From: Selaginella moellendorffii
Lineage: Eukaryota > Plantae > Lycopodiophyta
Direction of reading: 5' to 3'
Length of the DNA: 64,000 nucleotides
NCBI RefSeq assembly: GCF_000143415.4
Contig: NW_003314270.1
Location: 2,759,668 to 2,823,667, forward strand
Position 1 is the stretch's first letter. Every line of letters begins with the position of its first letter. Below, piece by piece: positions 6-64,000 of this stretch. The translations under genes and the position numbers were made by a program. A model generated the notes under the pieces. The model saw only the letters and a program-made list of their open reading frames with translations, did not search any database and had not been told where the DNA came from.

Positions 6-77
6 GGGGGTGTAGCTCAGATGGTAGAGCAATTGATTCACATGTGATAGGTAAGGGGATCGATGCCCTCACTTCCA
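6..77 (+). pseudogene. tRNA-Ala-derived pseudogene (anticodon now reads CAC)
   Basis: GGGGGTGTAGCTCAGATGGTAGAGC...GGGGATCGATGCCCTCACTTCCA is a plant tRNA-Ala body with G3:U70. The anticodon stem is mismatched (ATTGA/GTGAT) and the T-stem is one base short. A T-run (Pol III terminator) follows from 78. Confidence 0.8.
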
Positions 78-166: not shown

Positions 167-239
167 TGGAGGAGAGGGGCATCGATCCCCTCACCTATCG
201 CATGCAAAGCGATCGCTCTACCATCTGAGCTACGCCCAA
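167..239 (-). tRNA. tRNA-Ala(TGC), probably pseudogene (acceptor stem has 3 mismatches)
   Basis: Reverse complement: TTGGGCG TA GCTC AGATGGTA GAGC G ATCGC TT TGC AT GCGAT AGGTG AGGGG ATCGATG CCCCT CTCCTCC A. D, anticodon and T arms are intact; positions 1, 2 and 6 are unpaired. Confidence 0.8.
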
Positions 240-33375: not shown

Positions 33376-33569
33376 TGTAAGCAACCAAAGAGAACGACTT
33401 GAGAGACGGTCCATGGGATTCAAATATAGAGGGAAAGGGCCCATAAATAAGAGTGCACCCCTTTTCCAATTGGTTAAGGGTCTTGGGATATTTGGGGTTA
33501 AATGTCCTTGGGTTTGAATGGTACTGGTCCCGGGTGACCTCCCGGGAAGTCTAAATTTAGGAGCTTACA
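33376..33569 (+). mobile_element. 194-bp solo LTR carrying a 5S rRNA internal-control-region segment (Cassandra-like)
   Basis: TGTAAGC...GCTTACA perfect 7-bp inverted ends with AAAG direct repeats on both sides. 33497-33551 aligns to plant 5S rRNA +51 to +104 (about 41/55 by eye, including GGGTGACCTCCcGGGAAGTC). Confidence 0.75.
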
Positions 33570-34613: not shown

Positions 34614-35012
34614 TGTAGCGCATGTGATCATAGGATGAGATTTGGATATACTGTCACCGTGAATCCTAGGAACCTTGCGGGATAAATGGGGATAAAATAG
34701 CCACTAAGGGCTCTCTCATCAAGCAATTTCCCCTTTTCTAATTGGCTTAAAGGGAGAGAGATAAGGTGTGCTACAGTTATTCCCCTTGGCTCAGTAGGGG
34801 TTGTTAGTCAATAGTCAATGAGAACATTGACATCTCTGAAGGGGGGGTGAGTGTAACACATGTGATCATGGGATAAGATTTGGATATACTATCACTGTAG
34901 ATCCTTGAAACCTTGTGGGATAAATGGGGATAAAATAGCCATAAGGGCTCTCTCATCAAGCAATTGCCCCTTTTCCAGTTGGCTTAAGGGGAGAGAGATA
35001 AGGTGTGCTATA
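34614..35012 (+). mobile_element. TRIM with internal deletion (LTR 34614-34775, LTR 34852-35012)
   Basis: Two ~160-bp direct repeats that are the reverse complement of the LTRs at 52160-54204. PPT gaagggggggtgag precedes the second LTR. The PBS region is deleted. Confidence 0.85.
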
Positions 35013-35017
35013 ATTAG

Positions 35018-38000
35018 GTGATATTGACAATCAGTTCGGACTGGTTGGAGGACATTCGGGCTTCATATGGAAGTGATTCATTGGCGAAGGCAATCTTATG
35101 CCGTGCGGGGTTGTTAAAGCAGAGCCTTGGTAGCAAAGTAGCAAAAGTTGCTAGTTGTACTAATGCAAAGCTTCACTTCTTAGTTCGGGATGGGCTTATA
35201 TTCTATAAGCAAAAAAGATTGTATCTTCCCTCTAAGGATCTTCAGCAGTTATTTTTGTGGGAACATCATGATGTTCTAGCAACAGGACATGGTGGACAGC
35301 GAAAGACTCTAGCTTCGTTGAAAAAGGGATTTTTCTAGTCTGGTTGGAAGGTGATGTAGCGAATTATGTCCGTTCCTGCCCTATATGCCAGCAATGTAAG
35401 CACAGAACTGAGAAGTAAGCTGGAAAGTTGCGATGCATTCCAGCACCGGCATGGCCATTTCAAAGTGTGACACTTGATTTTGTCACTTGCTTGCCGAAGT
35501 CTAAGGGTTATGATACTTTGATGGTGGTTGTGGATCGGTTGTCGAAGATTGCACACTTCATTCCAACTGTGGGAACAGTAAATGTGAAACAAGCAGCAAA
35601 GCTCTTTTTCCATGAAGTAGTGCGGGTTTGTGGTCTTCCTGAAGAGATAATCTCGGATAGAGATTCGAGGTTTACAGGGAAGTTTTGGGGCACACTATTC
35701 CAGTTGTTTGGTACCATGTTAAAATTTAGTATGGTTTATCATCCTCAAACAGATGGGCAGACTGAACGCATGAATGCTCAAGTTGAGGATTATCTACAGT
35801 ACTATGTTGCGGCGGACCAACGCGACTGGGTTGAGCATTTAGATACAACAGAAATTTGTTATAACAACACATTTCACAACGCTATAGGCTGTTCTCCATG
35901 GGAAATGCTGCAAAGGAATGCTCATGGGGTCCCTCAACAGATTGTTGTACCGAAACCAATGACCAAAATGTTGGTCCTAGCCGTTGAGACTTATGCGGAG
36001 CAGCTACGCCAAGGTTGGTCTAGAGCTACTGAGGCAATGGGCAAAGCTCAGGATAGGTGTCGACATGATAAGGACCAGCATCGTCGGGATGTATCTTATC
36101 AAGTGGGAGATCAGGTGTGGTTATCTTCCCGGAACTTGCACATTAAGGGTTCTTTATCTCAGAAGCTCTTGCCGAGATATGTTGGACCCTATCGGGTGTT
36201 AAAACGAATTGGTGATGTATCCTATCGATTGGATCTTCTTGTGGAGATGTCCAATATTCATAATGTATTTCATGCCAATCTATTGGCTCCTTACACTATG
36301 GATATTGAGCGCCACGGGGAAATTCCTCCACTGCCAACAGTTGTGGATGGTGAACCTGAATACAAAGTTGAACGAATTCTGGCATGTCATCGGAAACGTG
36401 GTGGTCGTGTAAAGGAATATCTAGTTAAGTGGAAAGGTTACCCGACTTGTGAATCAACTTGGGAACCTCTTTGTAATCTTACCCATACTCGTGAGCTTAT
36501 CACGGAGTATAAGAGTAATAAAGACTAGCTTTTGTAAAAATCTTGTAATAAATCTTGCAAATCAATAAAGAATATATTTCTATAAACCAAAGTGTCGTTT
36601 CTCTCGTTCGATAGTACTTGGGTCAATTTTGGCAGGCTAACTTCGGCACTTTGGTGCATGGGTTCAATCCATAACCATGGGGATAACTATTATAGACTGA
36701 TCACAAGTCCCCGCCTCTCTCTCGATAACTCATTTTCGAAAAAGGGCGTGGTCGTGTAAACAACTTAATCTGCCAATTTATAATAGTTGTTTAAATCTTC
36801 CCGATTTCTTGCTTAGGGGAAGTTGGGCCTCTGGCCTTCTCCCTATGTCCTTGCGGGCAGGGATGTATCATTCCTTTGTAAGCCGAGTGGTATTCGGAGT
36901 AGCAAGGGTGGCTAACTCTGTTAGTCATTTCCTTGTCGGTGACAGCCGGAGGGTGTCTGAGTCTTAACGTTTTTGAACGTAGAGGAGAGGTCGTTCCATA
37001 ACTCATTTAAGTCAATGTGTTTCCCACATAGTGTGCTTTCCGTTAACTTTCGGAGTTGTTTCCTTGACGGTTTGCTAGACTTGGGTATGCATTGACGAGG
37101 ACGTCGATCTTCCCCAAGGGGGGAAGAGTGTCGCAAATGTGACTTCGGGTATCGAAAGATACTTGTTGACTAGTCCTTACGGGCACTCTTTCTTTACTGC
37201 CACGATGGTAGGAGGTCGGTACTGCTGGTCCCTTTTATGGTCTCCACCCAAGCTAGTTGAGAAACTGGTCATCGTGTGTGCACTTGACCAAATGAGCATA
37301 AGGACGGAATTCCTACATGCTATTTGTCAAGCATACTTGACCTGGTTAGAGAAACTCATTCGTTGACTTGCACTTGCTAGTGTTGGGAACCCCCGCGATA
37401 TTGAGACTAGTCCCTCAATATTCGCTAGATGATAGCTTACCATGTCTGCCAAACACCCTCGCTATCATGTCCTTTGTGTTAGTCTCATTTTGGTTCCAAG
37501 TGCTATTTATGGAAAGTGTCTAGATTAGCTCATTTGGCATATCTACGGAATGTAGAGATCGGCCTGAACACAATAGTGTTTGTCCTGTGCCCAAATTTGC
37601 AATCTAGTGCCATTCCATATTTAGTAAGTTTTGGACTTGTCCCAGAGACTAACTTCTAGTACTAAGGGAGGCTTGGGGTGAAAGCCCAAAGCGTGTGTCC
37701 CACAGGGGGAGGGGGGGGGGGGGTTCCAAATGTATAGTAGGGATAGTGGTTGGAATGCATGTTCGACCACTTGAGACATTAGTTTGGCTCCCATTGGGCT
37801 GTGTCGCTCCTTGTTCTGCGTCCGGCTTGGGTCTAAGCCCAAGCTCCATGCTGCTCTAGTCAATGGAGTACCCTCCTCCTCGCGTTAGGCCACCGGTATG
37901 CCAAAATTGTGCCAGACTCCGTCTAACACCATTTTGCGTGCAGGTGCTGGATACAGGGAGCTAGTGCTCGTGGGATTGTACCGGACCCTCATTTCGTACC

Positions 38001-51100: not shown

Positions 51101-52159
51101 AGTAAATTTCTCTCTAGCCTCTTTGCCAACAAGTAGTAATGGTCAATAAAAGTCTCTACTCAAGCTTGTATAATAAAGTTTTGAGCTTTGTAATGTATTT
51201 TAAAATTTCTAGGAGTATCTGAAGATATTTCACCTTTTTAAACAAAACCCATTTTATCTTTAAGCTTGTTCTAGTTCTTCAGAGATCAAAGTAGTGTCTC
51301 TAAGATTAACACCTATGCCTAACAGCAAGCTTTGCAACTCTCTATTTTGCATTTATGGCATGAAGCTTCTCAACTGCTTTGTTTAGCAAAAGCTCGATTA
51401 ACATAGCGGGTGATTTATGTGTTCCAAATATAGGTGGAAATTGAGCTATAACTTTTACTAGAGTAATTGTATAATTTTGCCTACATAAAAAATATTCACT
51501 AGGTGGAAATTTTCTTCTATAAGGAGGTATATACACCTGTGGATCACGTCTCATAAAAAGTGATTCATACTTTGTAAAGGGTGTTTCACACATAAAGTGG
51601 TGAGTATTTCCCTTAGCAATTGAGCGTCGCTCAACTGGTCTAAAAGGCAAATTTTCACACCTATTCACTTATATATTTATTCTTTGTCCATACCTCACTT
51701 TAGGAGATATGGAGCGTGTTTCACATAATTGCCCTTGATTCCTCCCTATGAGGTTAGATGTGATGTGAGTGCTCTCAAAATCTATAAAAGAGTGGCATCT
51801 TTCATATTGAGCAGTGTTTGTAATTTGGGTAATCTCTTTATATACAAGAGATGAGCCTTGATTAATTTTCCTAAGTGTACTAGATGTAGAGCGATTCGAA
51901 CAATTAGAGTGGTTCGTGATAACGGCTTTTGAATTCTCAATTTGTGAGTTTTGTTTAAGTATTATAAGGTTTTGCAATATGTGTAGTAGAATTAAACTCA
52001 AGACAAATGTACTCTCAAATTGTGTTTGAGTAATTGTCCATGCTAAAGGACCTTGGATCAAAGCCTTGAGACAGCACAATGTTCTAATTGTGATTCTATC
52101 TTTATTAAAGCCTTATAAGATTTAGCTGAATAATTCCCTAATTTATTCTTCACTAAGGC

Positions 52160-54204
52160 TGTAGTGCACCTTATCTCTCCCCTTAAGCCAACTGGAAAAG
52201 GGGCAATTGCTTGATGAGAGAGCCCTTAGTGGCTATTTTATCCCCATTTATCCCCCAAAGTTCCAAGGATCCACGGTGACAGTATATCTAAATCTCATCC
52301 CATGATCACATGCGTTACACTCACCCCCCCTTCAGAGATGTCAATGTCCTCATTGAACAACCCCTACTAAGCCAAGGGAAATCAGCACCTCCATTTCCAC
52401 ACTGAATCTATCAATCCTTCTATTGTGTAGACTAGCTATTCCATATGAGGCAACTAGTCATCCACCCGTACCGTAGTCCCACGGTGGATACCTTCGTCCG
52501 TGGATACTCCACACAAGAGGAAGGACGTATGCATGGATGCCCAATACGTACAATTTCAAATTTAGGGGTAGGAATATACCTTGCTCAAGGGTATATTATA
52601 TTTTTAAGTAGCCACTAATCAATGAGAATCGAACCCGTGCCATTTGCTCCGATACCAACTGTAGTGCACCTTATCTCTCTCCCCTTAATCCAACTGGAAA
52701 AGGAGCAATTGCTTGATGAAAGAGCCCTTAGTGGCTATTTTATCCCCATTTATCCCCCAAGATTCCAAGGATCCACGGTGACAGTATATCTAAATCTCAT
52801 CCCATGATCACATGCGTTACACTCACCCCCCCTTCAGAGATGTCAATGTCCTCATTGAACAACCCCTACTAAGCCAAGGGAAATCAGCACCTCCATTTCC
52901 ACACTGAATCTATCAATCCTTCTATTGTGTAGACTAGCTATTCCATATGAGGCAACTAGTCATCCACCCGTACCGTAGTCCCATGGTGGATACCTTCGTC
53001 CGTGGATACTCCACACAAGAGGAAGGACGTACGCATGGATGCCCAATACGTACAATTTCAAATTTAGGGGTAGGAATATACCTTGCTCAAGGGTATATTA
53101 TATTTTTAAGTAGCCACTAATCAATGAGAATCGAACCCGTGCCATTTGCTCCGATACCAACTGTAGTGCACCTTATCTCTCTTCTCTTAATCCAACTGGA
53201 AAAGGAGCAATTGCTTGATGAAAGAGCCCTTAGTGGCTATTTTATCCCCATTTATCCCCCAAGATTCCAAGGATCCACGGTGACAGTATATCCAAATCTC
53301 ATCCCATGATCACATGCGCTACACTCACCCCCTCTTCAGAGATGTCAATGTCCTCATTGACTATTGACTAATAACCCCTACTAAGCCAAGGGGAACCAGC
53401 ACCTCTATTTCCGCATTGAATCTACTAATCCTTCCATTGTGTAGACTAACTATTCCATATGAGGCAACTAGTCATCCACCCGTACCGTAGTCCCACGGTG
53501 GATACCTTCATCTGTGGATACTCCACACAAGAGGAAGGACATACGCATGGATGCCCAATACGTATGATTTCAAATTTAGGGGTAGGAATATACTTTGCTC
53601 AAGGGTATATTATATTTTTAAGTAGCCACTAATCAATGGGAATCGAACCCGTGCCATTTGCTCCGATACCAAACAAGAGGAAGGCCGTACGCATGGATGC
53701 CCAATACGTACGATTTCAAATTTAGGTGGATACCTTCGTCTGTGGATACTCCACACAAGAGGAAGGACATACGCATGGATGCCCAATACGTATGATTTCA
53801 AATTTAGGGGTAGGAATATACCTTGCTCAAGGTATATTATATTTTTAAGTAGCCACTAATCAATGGGAATCGAACCCGTGCCATTTGCTCCGATACCAAG
53901 AGGAAGGCCGTACGCATGGATGCCCAATACATACGATTTCAAATTTAGGGGCAGGAATATACTTTGCTCAAGGGTATATTATATTTTTAAGTAGCCACTA
54001 ATCAATGGGAATCGAACCCATGCCATTTGCTCCGATACCAACTGTAGCATACCTTATCTCTCTCCCCTTAAGCCAACTGGAAAAGGGGCAATTGCTTAAT
54101 GAGAGAGCCCTTAGTAGCTATTTTATCCCCATTTATCCCCTAACGTTCCAAGGATCCATGGTGACAGTATATCTAAATCTCATCCCATGATCACATGCGC
54201 TACA
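52160..54204 (-). mobile_element. Tandem-array TRIM: four ~160-bp LTRs (52160-52319, 52660-52821, 53162-53323, 54043-54204)
   Basis: TG...CA ends; perfect 5-bp TSD AAGGC (52155-52159, 54205-54209); PBS TGGTATCGGAGC (tRNA-iMet type); PPT gaagggggggtgag; ~502-bp period; non-coding. Confidence 0.93.
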
Positions 54205-54539
54205 AAGGCTAACTTTAGCTTTCTTTAAGTTAGAGCCAATGACAAGAGTTACAGGTGTCCAATTTTCTTATTTATCTATGCCTAAAAAAATTATGACACA
54301 TTGCTGAAAAATATATCTTCTAAAAGCTCAAGTAAGAACTTGCTCAGAAAAAAAGAATTCTATAGTAGTTAATTGTGTTTTCTAAATTCCATTATTTCTT
54401 CTTTTAGATTTTTCTCAAGAAATTACTACTTAAAAAATTTGAACTTGAGCTTAGCAATATATACCAAACTAAACAACTTAGGTAACTTTTTAAAGGAAAA
54501 TAAAGTTTAGTGCAATAGTATCGACCCAAGTTATGTCCT

Positions 54540-60431: not shown

Positions 60432-63400
60432 TGTGAGGGCCAAGTGTATGGCTACGATGCCGTATACTACTATTAGTGTAGTGGGATTTTGGTAGCCGTC
60501 ATATTGGTTTCAATCCAGACCACTCGCTCCTGTATATAAGCTAGGGTTTTTGGGCTAATTGATATGCACATTTTCTATATTCCCTTTCGATATTCCAAGC
60601 ACTCACATTAGTGGAGATGAGGGGCACTTTTGATTGTCCCTGAGGAGTGTTTGGATTTGGGATTTTGGTTTAGATCTAGCTTTTTCCATTTCCTTTCTTT
60701 TGTTATTTCCTTTTAAGATTTTGGTTTAGATCTAACTTTTTGCATTGTTTAGATCTACCATTTCCTTCTAGCTTTTTGTCATTTCTCTTCTTTTGCTCTT
60801 TCTTTTTCATCCGTCTCCATGGCAGATCAGCAATCTCCTCCTTTGACTCTGGAGCAGCAGTTGGTCAAATTGCTTGATGCTATGCGCTTGCAATTGAACA
60901 ACCAAACTCAGTTGATGGCGGCGTTCACGGCACATGGTACAACTCCTCCTGCTTTTGGTGCCAATCCTCGCGTTCGGCCGGAGTTCTTTCGTGGGAATCC
61001 TGGGGATGATATGTACCATTGGTTCGATCACTTCATGGTGATTGCCACATATCATTCTTGGGATGATGCTCGACGTTTGCGTGAGTTTCCCACGTGTCTC
61101 CAAGGGACGGCGTTGCAGTGGTACAATGGTTTGGGAGCAGCCACTTGCGGGGATTGGAGTGTTCTTCCGGATGTCTTCAAACGCGCCTTCGGACATGCCG
61201 ATGACTATGATGATGCTTTCCAACAATTGCATCGTCTTCGCCAAGGGCCATCTGAGTCAGTGATGCAATTTGGCGTTCGTTTCTGAAGTCTTTTGCTTCG
61301 TGCGGAGCCAAATATGTTGGAGCGGATCAAGCTAGGAATGTTGTGGCCAGCACTTCGTCAAGATCTTGTCGGACTTGTGCATGCACTTGCTCCCGCCACC
61401 CTTGACGATGCTCTTCGCTTGGCACAATGTTATGAGATATCGCCTCTCCCACTTCTCGCTGCACGTCCTTCAGCTCCTCTTCCTATAGGTGATGGTCCTG
61501 TTCCAATGGAGGTTGATGCTGCTGCTGCTCGAGTCCAAGGACAAGGGCGAGGATGTGGTCGTGGCTATGATATTCGCTGCTGGGTATGTGATGAAGTTGG
61601 TCATACTTATCGGCGTTGTCGGCATTTTCCGGATTGGCGACCTCCATTTCCTGGGTGGAGACCTTGGCGTCAGCAACGTCCCGTTGGTGCTGCTGCAGTG
61701 GAACGTTTGGACACCGAGATGCATCCAGGAAATGAGGAGTCGCGTGAGTAACGGAGGAACCTTGCGCGAATAAGTTAGTGACCCCTCCATCTTTCTTTCG
61801 GGAGTATCATCAAGGGGTTCACTCAGCACCAGTTCATCTAGTGTTTACTTTACAAGCTCTTTTTTATAACAAGAGGTCTCCTCTTCTTCTCTCCATGTTG
61901 GTTGATACAGGTTCGAGTTTATCTTCTATTGCTCGACCTGTTGCCACACGTTGCCGTCTACACTTGCGTCGTGTGGCGAAACCAGTTTTCATTCTTTATG
62001 GCAACGGCTGTACACATGCATGTGCACGGGATGAGGCGGACCTGGTTGTGTGTGTGGGCGATCTCGAACTTGAGTTACAATCCTTGCAAGTGGTGCCGAG
62101 TCAAGCTTTTGACCTCATTCTTGGTATGGATTGGTTGCAGCGCAATCATGCCAAGTGTGACTTTGAGGCTTCTCCCCCTTGTCTCATACTTCCTTATGTT
62201 TCATTTATTCCTCTTACTTCTGTCCCTCTTCGTCCCTCTACTTCTACCTTTGCTTCCATTACTTTTGTTCCCCCACTATTTCCTCCTATATTTCCATCTT
62301 GTTCTGCTCTTCCCTTTTTTGATCCCTCCGACGATCTTTGTGTTGCAGCGGTGGACCGGCTCATGAAGGAGTATTCTGATCTCTTTGAATTTGACCTATC
62401 GTCTGGGGCCAAGATTGCCACACGTCATCCAATTCCAACCGGGGATGCTCGTCCAATCAAGGTTCCCGTTCGTCGTCGGTCACCCAAGGAGATCCGGATT
62501 TTACGTGCAAATGTCAAGGAGATGTTGGAGAAAGGAGTTATTCGGAAGTCGTGGAGTCCTTGGGCATATGAACCTCATCTTGTGACGAAGCCTGATGGGA
62601 GTATTCGTTTCTGCATCGACTATCGCCCGTTAAACGAAGTGACGATCCCAGATGTGTACCCTCTTCCTCACACTGCTGATCTCTTGGATCGTCTGGGGCG
62701 AAGTCGTTGGTTCACCAAGCTAGATCTTGCTTCGGGGTACTGGCAAGTACCGATGGCCGACGAAGATATTCCTAAGACCGCTTTTCGTACATCATTTGGT
62801 TTGTACGAATTTTTGGTGATGCCGTTTGGTTTGAACAATACTCCAGCAACTTTCCAGCGGATGATGGATGAGGTTCTTTGCGATATGCCGGAGGTGACTG
62901 CTGACTTCATTGATGATGTCTTGATCCACTCGGAGGGGACGTGGGAGGAGCACGTTCGTGATGTTTGTAAAGTGTTGGATCGGCTACACGACGTTGGTTT
63001 AAAGCTGAAGCGGTCGAAGTGCATAATTGGATCCAAGGACACAACTTATCTTGGGTACCGTATTTCTCGTGAGGGTTTGCAAGTTGATCCTGACAAACTT
63101 GTGGCTATTCTAAAGTTCCTTACTCCGAAGTGTGTGAATGATGTGCAGCACTTCTTCGGCAAGGTGCAGTATCTCGAGCGTTTTGTGGATCATCTTTCTG
63201 ATCGCACTACACCATTGCGAGTGTTGCTGAAGTCATCAACGTCATCTTTCATTTGGTCTCCGGATTGTGAGCGGGCATTCGGAGATCTCAAAGAGTTATT
63301 GACAACTCCTCCGGTTTTGGCATATCTTGACTACACTCGACCTTTTATTTTGCGCATGGATGCTTCTGACATTGGTCTTGGAGGTGTGTTGATGCAAGAG

Positions 63401-64000
63401 AGCTCGAGTGTGCCTAGTCAGTGCCATCCCATTGCATATATAAGCCGTACATTACAACCAGTGGAGATGAACTACTCCACAACAGAGAAGGAGTGTTTAG
63501 GGGTTTCGAGAAACTTCATGCATATCTACATGGTTATCGGACGTTACTTGAAGGTGACCATATTGTTGTTACTTCGTTATTAAAGCGGAAGAACCAGGTT
63601 GGTCGTACTGCTTGGTGGGCTTTGAAGCTTCAGATATATGATTTTGATGTTGTTCACCGCCCAGGGAGTTCTATGGCTGATGCTGATGCCCTTTCTCGAG
63701 CTCTTCTTCCTTCTTCACTCTCTTCTCATGTTTCTGACGAGCTTGTCGTTCCAGCATCTGTGGATTTTCTAGACGAGGATTCTGTGCCGTCGGCAGTTGC
63801 TGTACTTGACGTTCAATGTCCACAAGGTGCAGAGCAAGATCTACCTTCCCTTGATGAGGTTCGCGAGGCTCAAAAGATTGAGCCATGGATTCGAAGGCTT
63901 CGAGATGGGTTTGAGAATCCTGCATCACTTGCTGATGACTTGCCTTTCCGGCATTTACATTCTCAATATCGTCTTGAAGGTGGCCTTTTTTATTTTGTGG
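60432..64000 (+). mobile_element. Ty3/gypsy retrotransposon, 5' part: LTR 60432-60607, tRNA-Ala-type PBS, gag, pol; runs off the window
   Basis: TGTGAG...CTCACA LTR; PBS tagtggagatgaggggca; gag 60819-61751 with internal TGA and knuckle CWVCDEVGHTYRRC; pol with LVDTGSS (protease), FIDD (RT) and DASDIGLGGVL (RNase H, frameshifted near 63500). Confidence 0.95.

What the first reader, a model, noticed from the sequence alone, without database searches (positions are those of the whole stretch)
52160..54204. TRIM with an apparent tRNA-type (type 2) Pol III promoter split across the LTR-PBS junction
Seen on the minus (sense) strand of the 5'-most unit: an A-box-like TGGCTTAAGGG near the LTR 3' end (54075-54065), the iMet PBS (54040-54029), then a perfect tRNA T-arm ATGGG-TTCGATT-CCCAT (54021-54005) containing a canonical B box GGTTCGATTCC, 57 nt after the A-box start. 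The only T4 run on the sense strand of the ~502-bp unit (ccccTTTTcc) lies 5 nt upstream of the A box. Known: Cassandra TRIMs use a 5S-derived Pol III promoter. Inference: this family uses a tRNA-type promoter that is complete only at an LTR followed by a PBS, so 3' and solo LTRs would be silent. Initiation just upstream of the T4 and termination at the same T4 in the next LTR would define a very short R region. Caveats: the 5' T4 must be read through, the A box is a loose match, and it is mutated (TGGATT) in the two middle LTRs.
Basis: partly seen in the sequence, partly recalled or inferred. Interest (0 to 1): 0.85.

Follow-up and report, generated by a model that had tools for sequence, protein, structure and literature searches.

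The report
Spikemoss mini-retrotransposon with tRNA-like promoter motifs
This is a tandem array of a very abundant, gene-less miniature LTR retrotransposon of the spikemoss Selaginella moellendorffii that really does carry tRNA-gene-like promoter boxes straddling its repeat/primer-site junction, but nothing yet shows RNA polymerase III uses them, and tRNA-promoter mini-retrotransposons were already described in this species in 2024.

Summary
Observation confirmed. Positions 52160-54204 (sense = minus strand) are one insertion with a 5-bp target duplication (GCCTT). It is a tandemly arrayed TRIM: four 160-162-bp LTRs, three internal domains, and an initiator-tRNA PBS 2 nt after each of LTR1-3. 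A box, PBS, T-arm/B box and the single T4 per unit lie exactly where stated.

The B box is non-random, with exact matches only in this element. The A box is at chance level in its 11-nt form but exact in a 12-nt form. T4 depletion is not significant. In-window copies show no excess conservation of either box. No full tRNA-like fold exists. The 5-bp T-stem is perfect only in unit 1.

New here: the LTR's T4/A-box hairpin block is homologous to a 5S-carrying, Cassandra-like solo LTR in the same window.

RNA-seq raw reads showed essentially no expression, so the polymerase question is untested.

The general idea is published: Helenus and "TRIMp3" (Kojima 2024) include a S. moellendorffii family. 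This family differs in having only a B box, placed outside the LTR.

First readers flagged the same motif on other pieces of this genome, without follow-up.

Verdict: a real element and real motifs. A split Pol III promoter is plausible (about 0.3) but unproven.

The parts
52160..54204 (-). Whole tandemly arrayed TRIM insertion: 4 LTRs and 3 internal domains, basic unit 502 bp
   Evidence: Repeat families with 502-bp spacing; sequence read; self-BLAST
54205..54209 (-). 5' target-site duplication GCCTT
52155..52159 (-). 3' target-site duplication GCCTT
54043..54204 (-). LTR1 (TG...CA), intact A-box-like motif; about 93% identical to LTR3 and LTR4
53162..53323 (-). LTR2, A-box position reads TGGATTAAGAGA
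52660..52821 (-). LTR3, A-box position reads TGGATTAAGGGG
52160..52319 (-). LTR4 (3'-most), intact A-box-like motif but no PBS or B box behind it
54064..54088 (-). LTR hairpin block CCCCTTTTCCAGTTGGCTTAAGGGG, holding T4 (54084-54081) and the 12-nt A-box-like motif (54075-54064). Homologous block in the Cassandra-like LTR at 33459-33481. Also present in LTR4 at 52203-52179
54118..54128 (-). TATA-like GGATAAAATAG, invariant in all 6 LTR copies in the window. Also at 53247-53237, 52745-52735 and 52243-52233. A CAA at 54094-54092 follows it
54029..54040 (-). PBS TGGTATCGGAGC, 2 nt after the LTR end. Further copies at 53898-53887, 53671-53660, 53159-53148 and 52657-52646
   Evidence: Same PBS as Helenus-1_SMo
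54005..54021 (-). T-arm-like hairpin with an exact B box at 54018-54008. Exact B boxes also at 53876-53866 and 53649-53639. Variant ..TTCT at 53137-53127 and 52635-52625
53324..53337 (-). Polypurine tract GAAGAGGGGGTGAG abutting LTR2. Equivalent tracts at 52835-52822 and 52333-52320
52363..52374 (-). Second exact 12-nt A-box-like motif TGGCTTAGTAGG, in the loop of a CCCC/GGGG hairpin near the PPT. Also at 52876-52865 and 53388-53377. No B box lies downstream of it
53672..54042 (-). Rearranged part of internal domain 1: two extra copies of the PBS-to-about-+140 segment, joined at short microhomologies next to the PBS
34614..35012 (+). Second copy of the family (about 90% identical), with the PBS, T-arm and most of the internal domain deleted
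33376..33569 (+). Cassandra-like solo LTR with a 5S-like 3' part. It shares the T4/hairpin block and about 70 nt of weaker similarity with this TRIM's LTR

Best explanation
This is one insertion of a tandemly arrayed, non-autonomous miniature LTR retrotransposon (TA-TRIM) of Selaginella moellendorffii. The family is very abundant.

Shown by structure:
- It is copied by the standard LTR-element route. Initiator tRNA primes at the PBS, a polypurine tract primes the plus strand, and a helper element's integrase makes a 5-bp duplication.
- The array and the extra PBS-proximal duplications are of the kinds known from other TRIM arrays.

Inferred:
- Its genomic RNA most likely starts just downstream of the invariant TATA-like block of the LTR, around the CAA at 54094-54092, and has a very short R around the T4 hairpin.
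- I lean towards a conventional (Pol II-type) LTR promoter, or an element that is now silent.
- On that reading the T-arm/B-box motif after the PBS is a tRNA-related leader segment. It either acts in cis with the PBS or primer tRNA, or is a relic. It is not the element's working promoter.
- The motifs of a plant type-2 Pol III promoter are nevertheless all present, so that reading stays a serious rival (see rivals).
For: Structure:
- TG..CA LTRs, PBS, PPT and a perfect 5-bp TSD.
- No long ORF on the sense strand.
- 14,085 DNA contig pieces of the same species laid on the array.
- The organism is fixed by a 100% match of a window ORF to a S. moellendorffii protein.
- Tandem TRIM arrays are common and were reported for five S. 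moellendorffii subfamilies (PMC4717578).

Against a dedicated tRNA-type unit:
- ARAGORN and the Rfam tRNA model find nothing here. Only the 17-nt T-arm scores, through tmRNA models. The tRNA model does pick up two tRNA-like sequences at 6-77 and 167-237.
- The A-box motif lies inside a hairpin block shared with the Cassandra-like LTR. There it reads TGGTTAAGGG and is not an A box.
- A second exact A-box-like motif sits in a similar hairpin near the PPT with no B box after it.
- The most conserved LTR block is the TATA-like region (0 of 11 variable columns), not the A box (4 of 12).
- T4 would lie at about +4 to +13 of a Pol III transcript.
Against: - The B box is an exact 11/11 match found nowhere else in 64 kb (3 against 0.31 expected).
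- Its sequence, rather than the RNA stem, is what the copies share. The stem is only 3 bp in 4 of 5 copies and no more stable than shuffles. That fits a DNA-level site better than an RNA hairpin.
- The 12-nt A-box form is exact at a permitted distance.
- The LTR is related to a 5S (Pol III) TRIM LTR.
- All three local TRIM families share TTTTCCA near the LTR 3' part.
- No polyadenylated or any other transcripts were seen, so Pol II use is not shown either.
Confidence: 0.5

Rival explanations
1. Split type-2 Pol III promoter. TFIIIC binds the B box just after the PBS and the A-box-like motif at the LTR end. TFIIIB sits on the TATA-like block. Pol III starts near the CAA, reads through the weak T4 in the 5' LTR and stops at the same T4 in the next LTR. 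The result is a roughly 500-nt RNA with an R of about 10-15 nt. Only LTR+PBS junctions are promoter-competent. The family would be a Cassandra relative whose 5S-type internal promoter was replaced by a tRNA-type one.
For: - The B box is exact and non-random.
- The 12-nt A-box form is exact, 57 nt upstream.
- TATA-like and CAA elements lie upstream, as in plant tRNA genes (PMC13578239).
- The unit length of 502 nt is within the range of known Pol III TRIMs (PMC10886601).
- The LTR is homologous to a 5S-carrying LTR. There too the only T4 lies about 17 nt after the predicted 5S-type start.
- Helenus-1_SMo in the same genome also has a T4 (TTTTCCA) between its tRNA-like unit and the PBS that full-length RNA must read through.
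- The B-box sequence is kept where the RNA stem is not.
- The absence of reads in a cDNA library is what a non-polyadenylated RNA would give.
Against: - There is no transcript evidence at all.
- In-window copies show no excess conservation of the boxes.
- The A box is mutated in 2 of 6 LTRs and the B box in 2 of 5 units.
- The 11-nt A-box match is at chance level, and the 12-nt form was chosen after the fact.
- T4 within the first ~13 nt should abort many transcripts.
- There is no tRNA-like fold.
- The A-box motif is explained equally well as part of a conserved hairpin.
Confidence: 0.3
2. Fossil or chance. The T-arm-like 13-17-mer is a remnant of a tRNA or SINE fragment picked up next to the PBS, for example by template switching during reverse transcription. 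Alternatively it is a chance B-box match in one of many repeat families. It has no present function. At most it is an orphan TFIIIC site.
For: - It lies 8 nt from the PBS, where tRNA-related sequence is most easily acquired.
- The first internal domain shows that template-switch-like joins next to the PBS do occur in this family.
- Only a half-tRNA motif is present.
- Some genomic copies carry a CpG-decayed version, GGTTTGATT (loose-end consensus of DNA contigs).
- The scan read thousands of windows, so one chance B box in some family is expected.
Against: - The motif is present in every unit here, and first readers noted it on at least three other pieces of the genome. It is therefore a family feature kept through amplification.
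- An exact A-box-like partner, TATA and CAA at fitting distances would all have to be coincidence.
Confidence: 0.15

Closest known systems
Helenus-1_SMo and the 'TRIMp3' class (Kojima 2024, PMC10886601)
   Same: Same species. Both are TRIMs with the same PBS (TGGTATCGGAGC) and 5-bp TSDs. Both carry tRNA-type box motifs and a T4 (TTTTCCA) in the LTR 3' part that full-length RNA must pass.
   Different: Helenus has a complete tRNA-like sequence (A and B boxes) inside a 120-bp LTR, with an 85-bp internal part. Here the LTR is 160-162 bp and the internal part about 340 bp. No tRNA-like fold is detectable. The B box lies outside the LTR, after the PBS, so the putative promoter is split. Kojima's screen looked only at LTRs and would not have found this.
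Cassandra TRIMs (5S-derived type-1 promoter in the LTR; Kalendar 2008, cited from my own knowledge and through PMC7215508)
   Same: Both are TRIMs with an iMet PBS and form tandem arrays. The LTR here shares a significant 24-nt hairpin block (22 matches, 1 gap) and about 70 nt of weaker similarity with the 5S-carrying solo LTR at 33376-33569.
   Different: No 5S box C or other 5S similarity is found in this LTR. The segment that carries the 5S control region in the relative is replaced by about 21 nt.
Tandemly arrayed TRIMs (TA-TRIM, SmoRetroS subfamilies; Gao et al. 2016, PMC4717578)
   Same: L4I3-type array under one TSD. S. moellendorffii has 8 TRIM subfamilies (1,177 complete elements, 10,158 copies), five of them with arrays.
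   Different: That paper mentions neither tRNA nor polymerase III (0 occurrences of either term).
tRNA genes and tRNA-derived SINEs (type-2 Pol III promoters)
   Same: B-box consensus, an acceptable A box, A-B spacing inside the functional range, and upstream TATA-like and CAA elements.
   Different: No cloverleaf and no acceptor or anticodon arms. The element is mobilised as an LTR element, not by a LINE. The terminator lies upstream of the A box.

Membership tests
[quoted passage not shown] | Two short direct terminal repeats (TG...CA) around a short non-coding internal domain | tested here: met
   160-162-bp LTRs and an internal domain of about 340 bp. Only short ORFs, the longer ones antisense
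[quoted passage not shown] | PBS complementary to a tRNA 3' end next to the 5' LTR, and a PPT next to the 3' LTR | tested here: met
   TGGTATCGGAGC lies 2 nt after the LTR. A purine tract abuts the next LTR. The S. moellendorffii iMet tRNA itself was not available; the PBS equals that of Helenus-1_SMo
[quoted passage not shown] | Target-site duplication of 4-6 bp | tested here: met
   GCCTT on both sides of the whole array
TA-TRIM (tandemly arrayed TRIM) | Three or more LTRs alternating with internal domains | tested here: met
   4 LTRs and 3 internal domains with 502-bp spacing
Helenus | tRNA-derived sequence with A and B boxes inside the LTR | tested here: not met
   No tRNA hit by ARAGORN or Rfam. 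The B box is outside the LTR. There is no similarity in layout to the Helenus-1_SMo LTR
Cassandra | [quoted passage not shown] | tested here: not met
   No 5S hit even at E<=10 on the LTR alone. Only the TTAAG core of box A is present, and there is no box C. There is partial LTR homology to a local 5S-carrying LTR
TRIMp3 (TRIM with a Pol III promoter) | [quoted passage not shown] | tested here: inconclusive
   The motifs are present. No transcripts were seen in RNA reads. No conservation excess
Type-2 Pol III transcription unit | A box and B box at 30-90 bp, with a start about 10-20 bp upstream of the A box | tested here: met
   Motif level only: a 57-nt start-to-start distance, and the CAA 17-19 nt before the A box
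Type-2 Pol III transcription unit | T-run terminator downstream of the unit and none inside it | tested here: inconclusive
   There is one T4 per 502 nt, but this is not a significant depletion (P=0.29). It lies just after the predicted start
Type-2 Pol III transcription unit | Actual Pol III/TFIIIC occupancy and uncapped transcripts | not testable with these tools
   Only one cDNA raw-read run could be laid, and it gave 8 reads, 7 of them from another locus

The most novel reading that the evidence does not exclude
A lycophyte TRIM lineage related to Cassandra lost the 5S-type internal promoter and now runs on a split tRNA-type Pol III promoter. The A box is at the end of the LTR and the B box lies just beyond the PBS, so only an LTR followed by a PBS can fire. 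A weak T4 shared by the three local TRIM families defines a 10-15-nt R. That would be a third, structurally distinct solution for Pol III-driven LTR retrotransposition within one genome.
Probability: 0.3. Interest if true: 0.7.

Novelty: new variant of a known kind. Interest (0 to 1): 0.45.

Why it matters
How gene-less LTR retrotransposons get transcribed, and who mobilises them, is still open even for Cassandra.

If this family uses a B box placed after its PBS, Pol III promoters would have been recruited by TRIMs in at least three different architectures within one small genome: 5S in the LTR, a whole tRNA in the LTR, and split across the LTR-PBS junction. It would also give a built-in explanation of why solo and 3' LTRs stay silent.

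The family appears to be high-copy (14,085 DNA contig pieces matched it). Thousands of B boxes would then also be potential TFIIIC sites with possible chromatin effects.

If it is not used, the finding is an ordinary member of a catalogued repeat class.

Tried and rejected
1. Full tRNA or tRNA-like cloverleaf across LTR end, PBS and T-arm: rejected (ARAGORN 0 genes; Rfam gives only a T-arm fragment).

2. Sense-strand T4 depletion as evidence: rejected (P=0.29).

3. The T-arm as a stable RNA hairpin, dimerisation or packaging stem: weak. It scores -5.5 kcal/mol in unit 1, has only 3 bp in the other copies, and z-scores are near 0.

4. PBS:T-loop pairing (AUCGGA with UUCGAU) as a PBS-masking stem: it is the predicted minimum-energy fold, but no better than shuffles.

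5. Extended PBS, that is, the complement of the initiator-tRNA T-arm: it does not fit my recalled plant iMet sequence and an 8-nt spacer intervenes. No Selaginella iMet sequence was available to test it.

6. Derivation of the A-box motif from 5S box A: only the TTAAG core matches Kalendar's consensus. Kept as a lead only.

7. Collecting more genomic copies failed by every route:
- The antisense 61-aa ORF as a protein query found nothing.
- Two metagenome pattern scans found nothing.
- The chromovirus integrase ORF found no Selaginella proteins.
- Exact-protein look-ups of two window ORFs were not on record.
- A search of earlier findings by sequence was blank.

8. RNA evidence:
- The cDNA raw-read run gave 8 reads in 9.2 million. 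Seven of them are a 44-nt LTR-like motif inside another transcript.
- A run only guessed to be RNA held one LTR-plus-flank contig and one 134-nt adapter-flanked fragment starting at the LTR/PBS border. That is too little to interpret.

Full report
**What is there**

Read on the minus strand, 52160-54204 is a single insertion bounded by a perfect 5-bp duplication, GCCTT (54209-54205 and 52159-52155).
- It holds four LTRs of 160-162 bp that begin TG and end CA: 54204-54043, 53323-53162, 52821-52660 and 52319-52160.
- The LTRs alternate with three internal domains. The regular spacing is 502 bp.
- LTR1, LTR2 and LTR3 are each followed after 2 nt by TGGTATCGGAGC. LTR4 runs straight into the target-site duplication. 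Each of the three downstream LTRs is preceded by a purine tract.
- No tRNA gene and no coding capacity are present.
- The first internal domain carries two extra copies of the segment from the PBS to about +140, joined at 2-3-nt microhomologies.
- A second copy of the family, about 90% identical, lies at 34614-35012. It has lost the PBS, the T-arm and most of the internal domain.

The organism is Selaginella moellendorffii. A 684-aa window ORF is 100% identical to a RefSeq protein of that species, as earlier notes of this scan had said.

**The motifs**

B box:
- GGTTCGATTCC is an exact match to GGTTCGANNCC.
- In 64 kb such matches occur only in this element (3 found against 0.31 expected).
- Two of the five PBS-proximal copies read ..TTCT instead.
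- The perfect 5-bp stem is peculiar to unit 1, where CATGGG replaces CACGGG at a CpG. The other four copies pair only GGG/CCC, and none folds better than shuffled sequence.
- So the copies share the B-box sequence rather than an RNA hairpin.

A box:
- TGGCTTAAGGG is a 2-mismatch match to the 11-nt consensus. That is chance level (247 against 233).
- With one more D-loop position (TRGCNNARNNGG) it is exact. That pattern is rare: 13 against 6.5 expected, and 8 of the 13 lie in copies of this element. I chose that form after seeing the sequence.
- A second exact match (TGGCTTAGTAGG) sits near the PPT in a similar CCCC/GGGG hairpin, with no B box after it.

Upstream elements:
- An invariant TATA-like block (GGATAAAATAG, 54128-54118) and a CAA (54094-54092) lie upstream of the A box.
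- These are the kinds of upstream elements described for land-plant tRNA genes, though they are said to be weaker outside angiosperms (PMC13578239).
- They fit a Pol II TATA/initiator just as well.

Terminator:
- One T4 per 502-nt unit is correct but not a significant depletion (2.4 expected, P=0.29).

tRNA-like fold:
- ARAGORN and the Rfam tRNA model see no tRNA-like fold here.
- The same Rfam model scores two tRNA-like sequences at 6-77 and 167-237 above its threshold. The negative result is therefore meaningful.

**Relatives**

The central LTR block CCCCTTTTCCAGTTGGCTTAAGGG holds the T4 and the A-box motif.
- It recurs with 22 matches and one gap in the solo LTR at 33376-33569. About 70 nt of weaker similarity surrounds it. 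No shuffle out of 2000 reached either alignment score.
- That LTR carries a 5S-like 3' part (GGGTGACCTCCCGGGAAGTC; a weak Rfam 5S hit). It is therefore Cassandra-like.
- In both LTRs the block folds into a hairpin.
- This TRIM's LTR thus looks like a relative of the local Cassandra-type LTR that lacks the 5S control region.
- In the 5S-bearing relative the only T4 also lies about 17 nt after the start predicted from the 5S alignment.
- Helenus-1_SMo has TTTTCCA between its tRNA-like unit and the PBS. All three local TRIM families therefore share a T4 that any full-length RNA must pass in the 5' LTR.

**Literature**

- Kojima (2024, PMC10886601) described Helenus, TRIMs with a tRNA-like sequence inside the LTR. 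He proposed the class name TRIMp3 for TRIMs with Pol III promoters. The only plant Helenus is Helenus-1_SMo of this species, with a 120-bp LTR, an 85-bp internal part and the same PBS.
- His screen compared tRNAs and SINEs with LTRs only. An element whose B box lies in the internal domain would have been missed.
- Gao et al. (2016, PMC4717578) catalogued 8 TRIM subfamilies, with 10,158 copies and tandem arrays, in this genome. They do not mention tRNA or polymerase III.
- The element class, the array and the general idea are therefore known. The split layout and the link to the Cassandra-like LTR are not described in what I could read.

**Reads**

- DNA contigs of the species gave 14,085 pieces on the array. 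The family is very abundant.
- One loose-end consensus shows copies with a CpG-decayed B box.
- A cDNA raw-read run gave 8 reads out of 9.2 million read. Seven of them are a 44-nt LTR-hairpin-like motif embedded in another transcript.
- The family is therefore essentially absent from that library. A silenced Pol II element and a non-polyadenylated Pol III RNA would both give this result.
- A run only guessed to be RNA held an LTR-plus-flank contig and a 134-nt adapter-flanked fragment beginning at the LTR/PBS border. I do not build on it.

**Conservation**

- Among the six LTR copies in the window, 20% of columns vary. The A box has 4 of 12 variable columns, the T4 has 0 of 4, and the TATA-like block has 0 of 11.
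- Among the five PBS-proximal segments, 9% of columns vary. The B box has 1 of 11.
- There is no excess conservation of the boxes. However, the array units are not independent, and conservation among dead copies is a weak test anyway.
- All attempts to fetch more copies failed.

**Judgement**

The element is a tandemly arrayed TRIM replicated by the ordinary tRNA-primed route.

The Pol III reading is coherent and has circumstantial support:
- an exact B box kept as sequence rather than as a stem;
- a fitting A box, TATA and CAA;
- kinship with a 5S TRIM;
- a shared T4.

It also has weaknesses:
- no expression or occupancy evidence;
- an awkward T4 at about +4 to +13;
- a competing explanation for the A-box motif as part of a conserved hairpin.

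My odds:
- about 0.5 on a conventional or silent TRIM whose T-arm motif is a tRNA-related leader element or relic;
- about 0.3 on a working split Pol III promoter;
- about 0.15 on a pure fossil or chance.

First readers noted the same motif on at least three other pieces of this genome (s1-399037, s1-388367, s1-403014), with no follow-up on record.

Noticed in passing
window 6-77 (+) and 167-237 (-): Two tRNA-like sequences score above the Rfam tRNA gathering threshold (37.2 and 38.5 bits). They lie in inverted orientation about 90 nt apart, and the first is followed by a T8 run. ARAGORN did not call them. Together they form a long hairpin that also scores weakly as a MIR2670-like precursor.
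   Followed up: partly
window 53672-54042 (-): The first internal domain holds two extra copies of the PBS-to-about-+140 segment, plus a partial one. All are joined within 1-3 nt of the PBS start at short microhomologies (CTCTTG/GTTGG). This looks like repeated template switching at the end of the minus-strand template, or slippage after insertion.
   Followed up: partly
window 34614-35012 (+): A second copy of the same TRIM has an internal deletion. It removes the PBS, the T-arm and about 270 nt, joining GTTA directly to TTCCCCTTGG. The copy is directly followed by chromovirus integrase/chromodomain coding sequence (ORF 35428-36528). Another first-reader note (s1-339433) covers this.
   Followed up: partly
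window 33376-33569 (+): This Cassandra-like solo LTR has a degenerate 5S 3' half and only one T4. That T4 lies upstream of the 5S control region rather than downstream, as in 5S genes. The LTR also contains what looks like a short duplication of the GGTTAAG..CTTGGG (5S box A-like) segment.
   Followed up: partly
window 54054-54097 (laid reads): Seven cDNA reads carry a 44-nt variant of the LTR hairpin block (T5 instead of T4, CAATTGG) flanked on both sides by unrelated sequence. A relative of this motif therefore sits inside some expressed transcript elsewhere in the genome.
   Followed up: no
window 53909-54042 (contig of run X19): A 134-nt fragment is flanked by sequencing adapters on both sides. 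It starts at the first base after the LTR (the U5/PBS border). That is where an RNA template would end after RNase H removal of R-U5. It is a single low-depth contig from a run only guessed to be RNA.
   Followed up: no
window 61778-63583 (+): A Ty3/gypsy protease-RT-RNase H ORF (601 aa) lies 7.5 kb from the array. No copy of the TRIM's PBS lies near it within the window.
   Followed up: no
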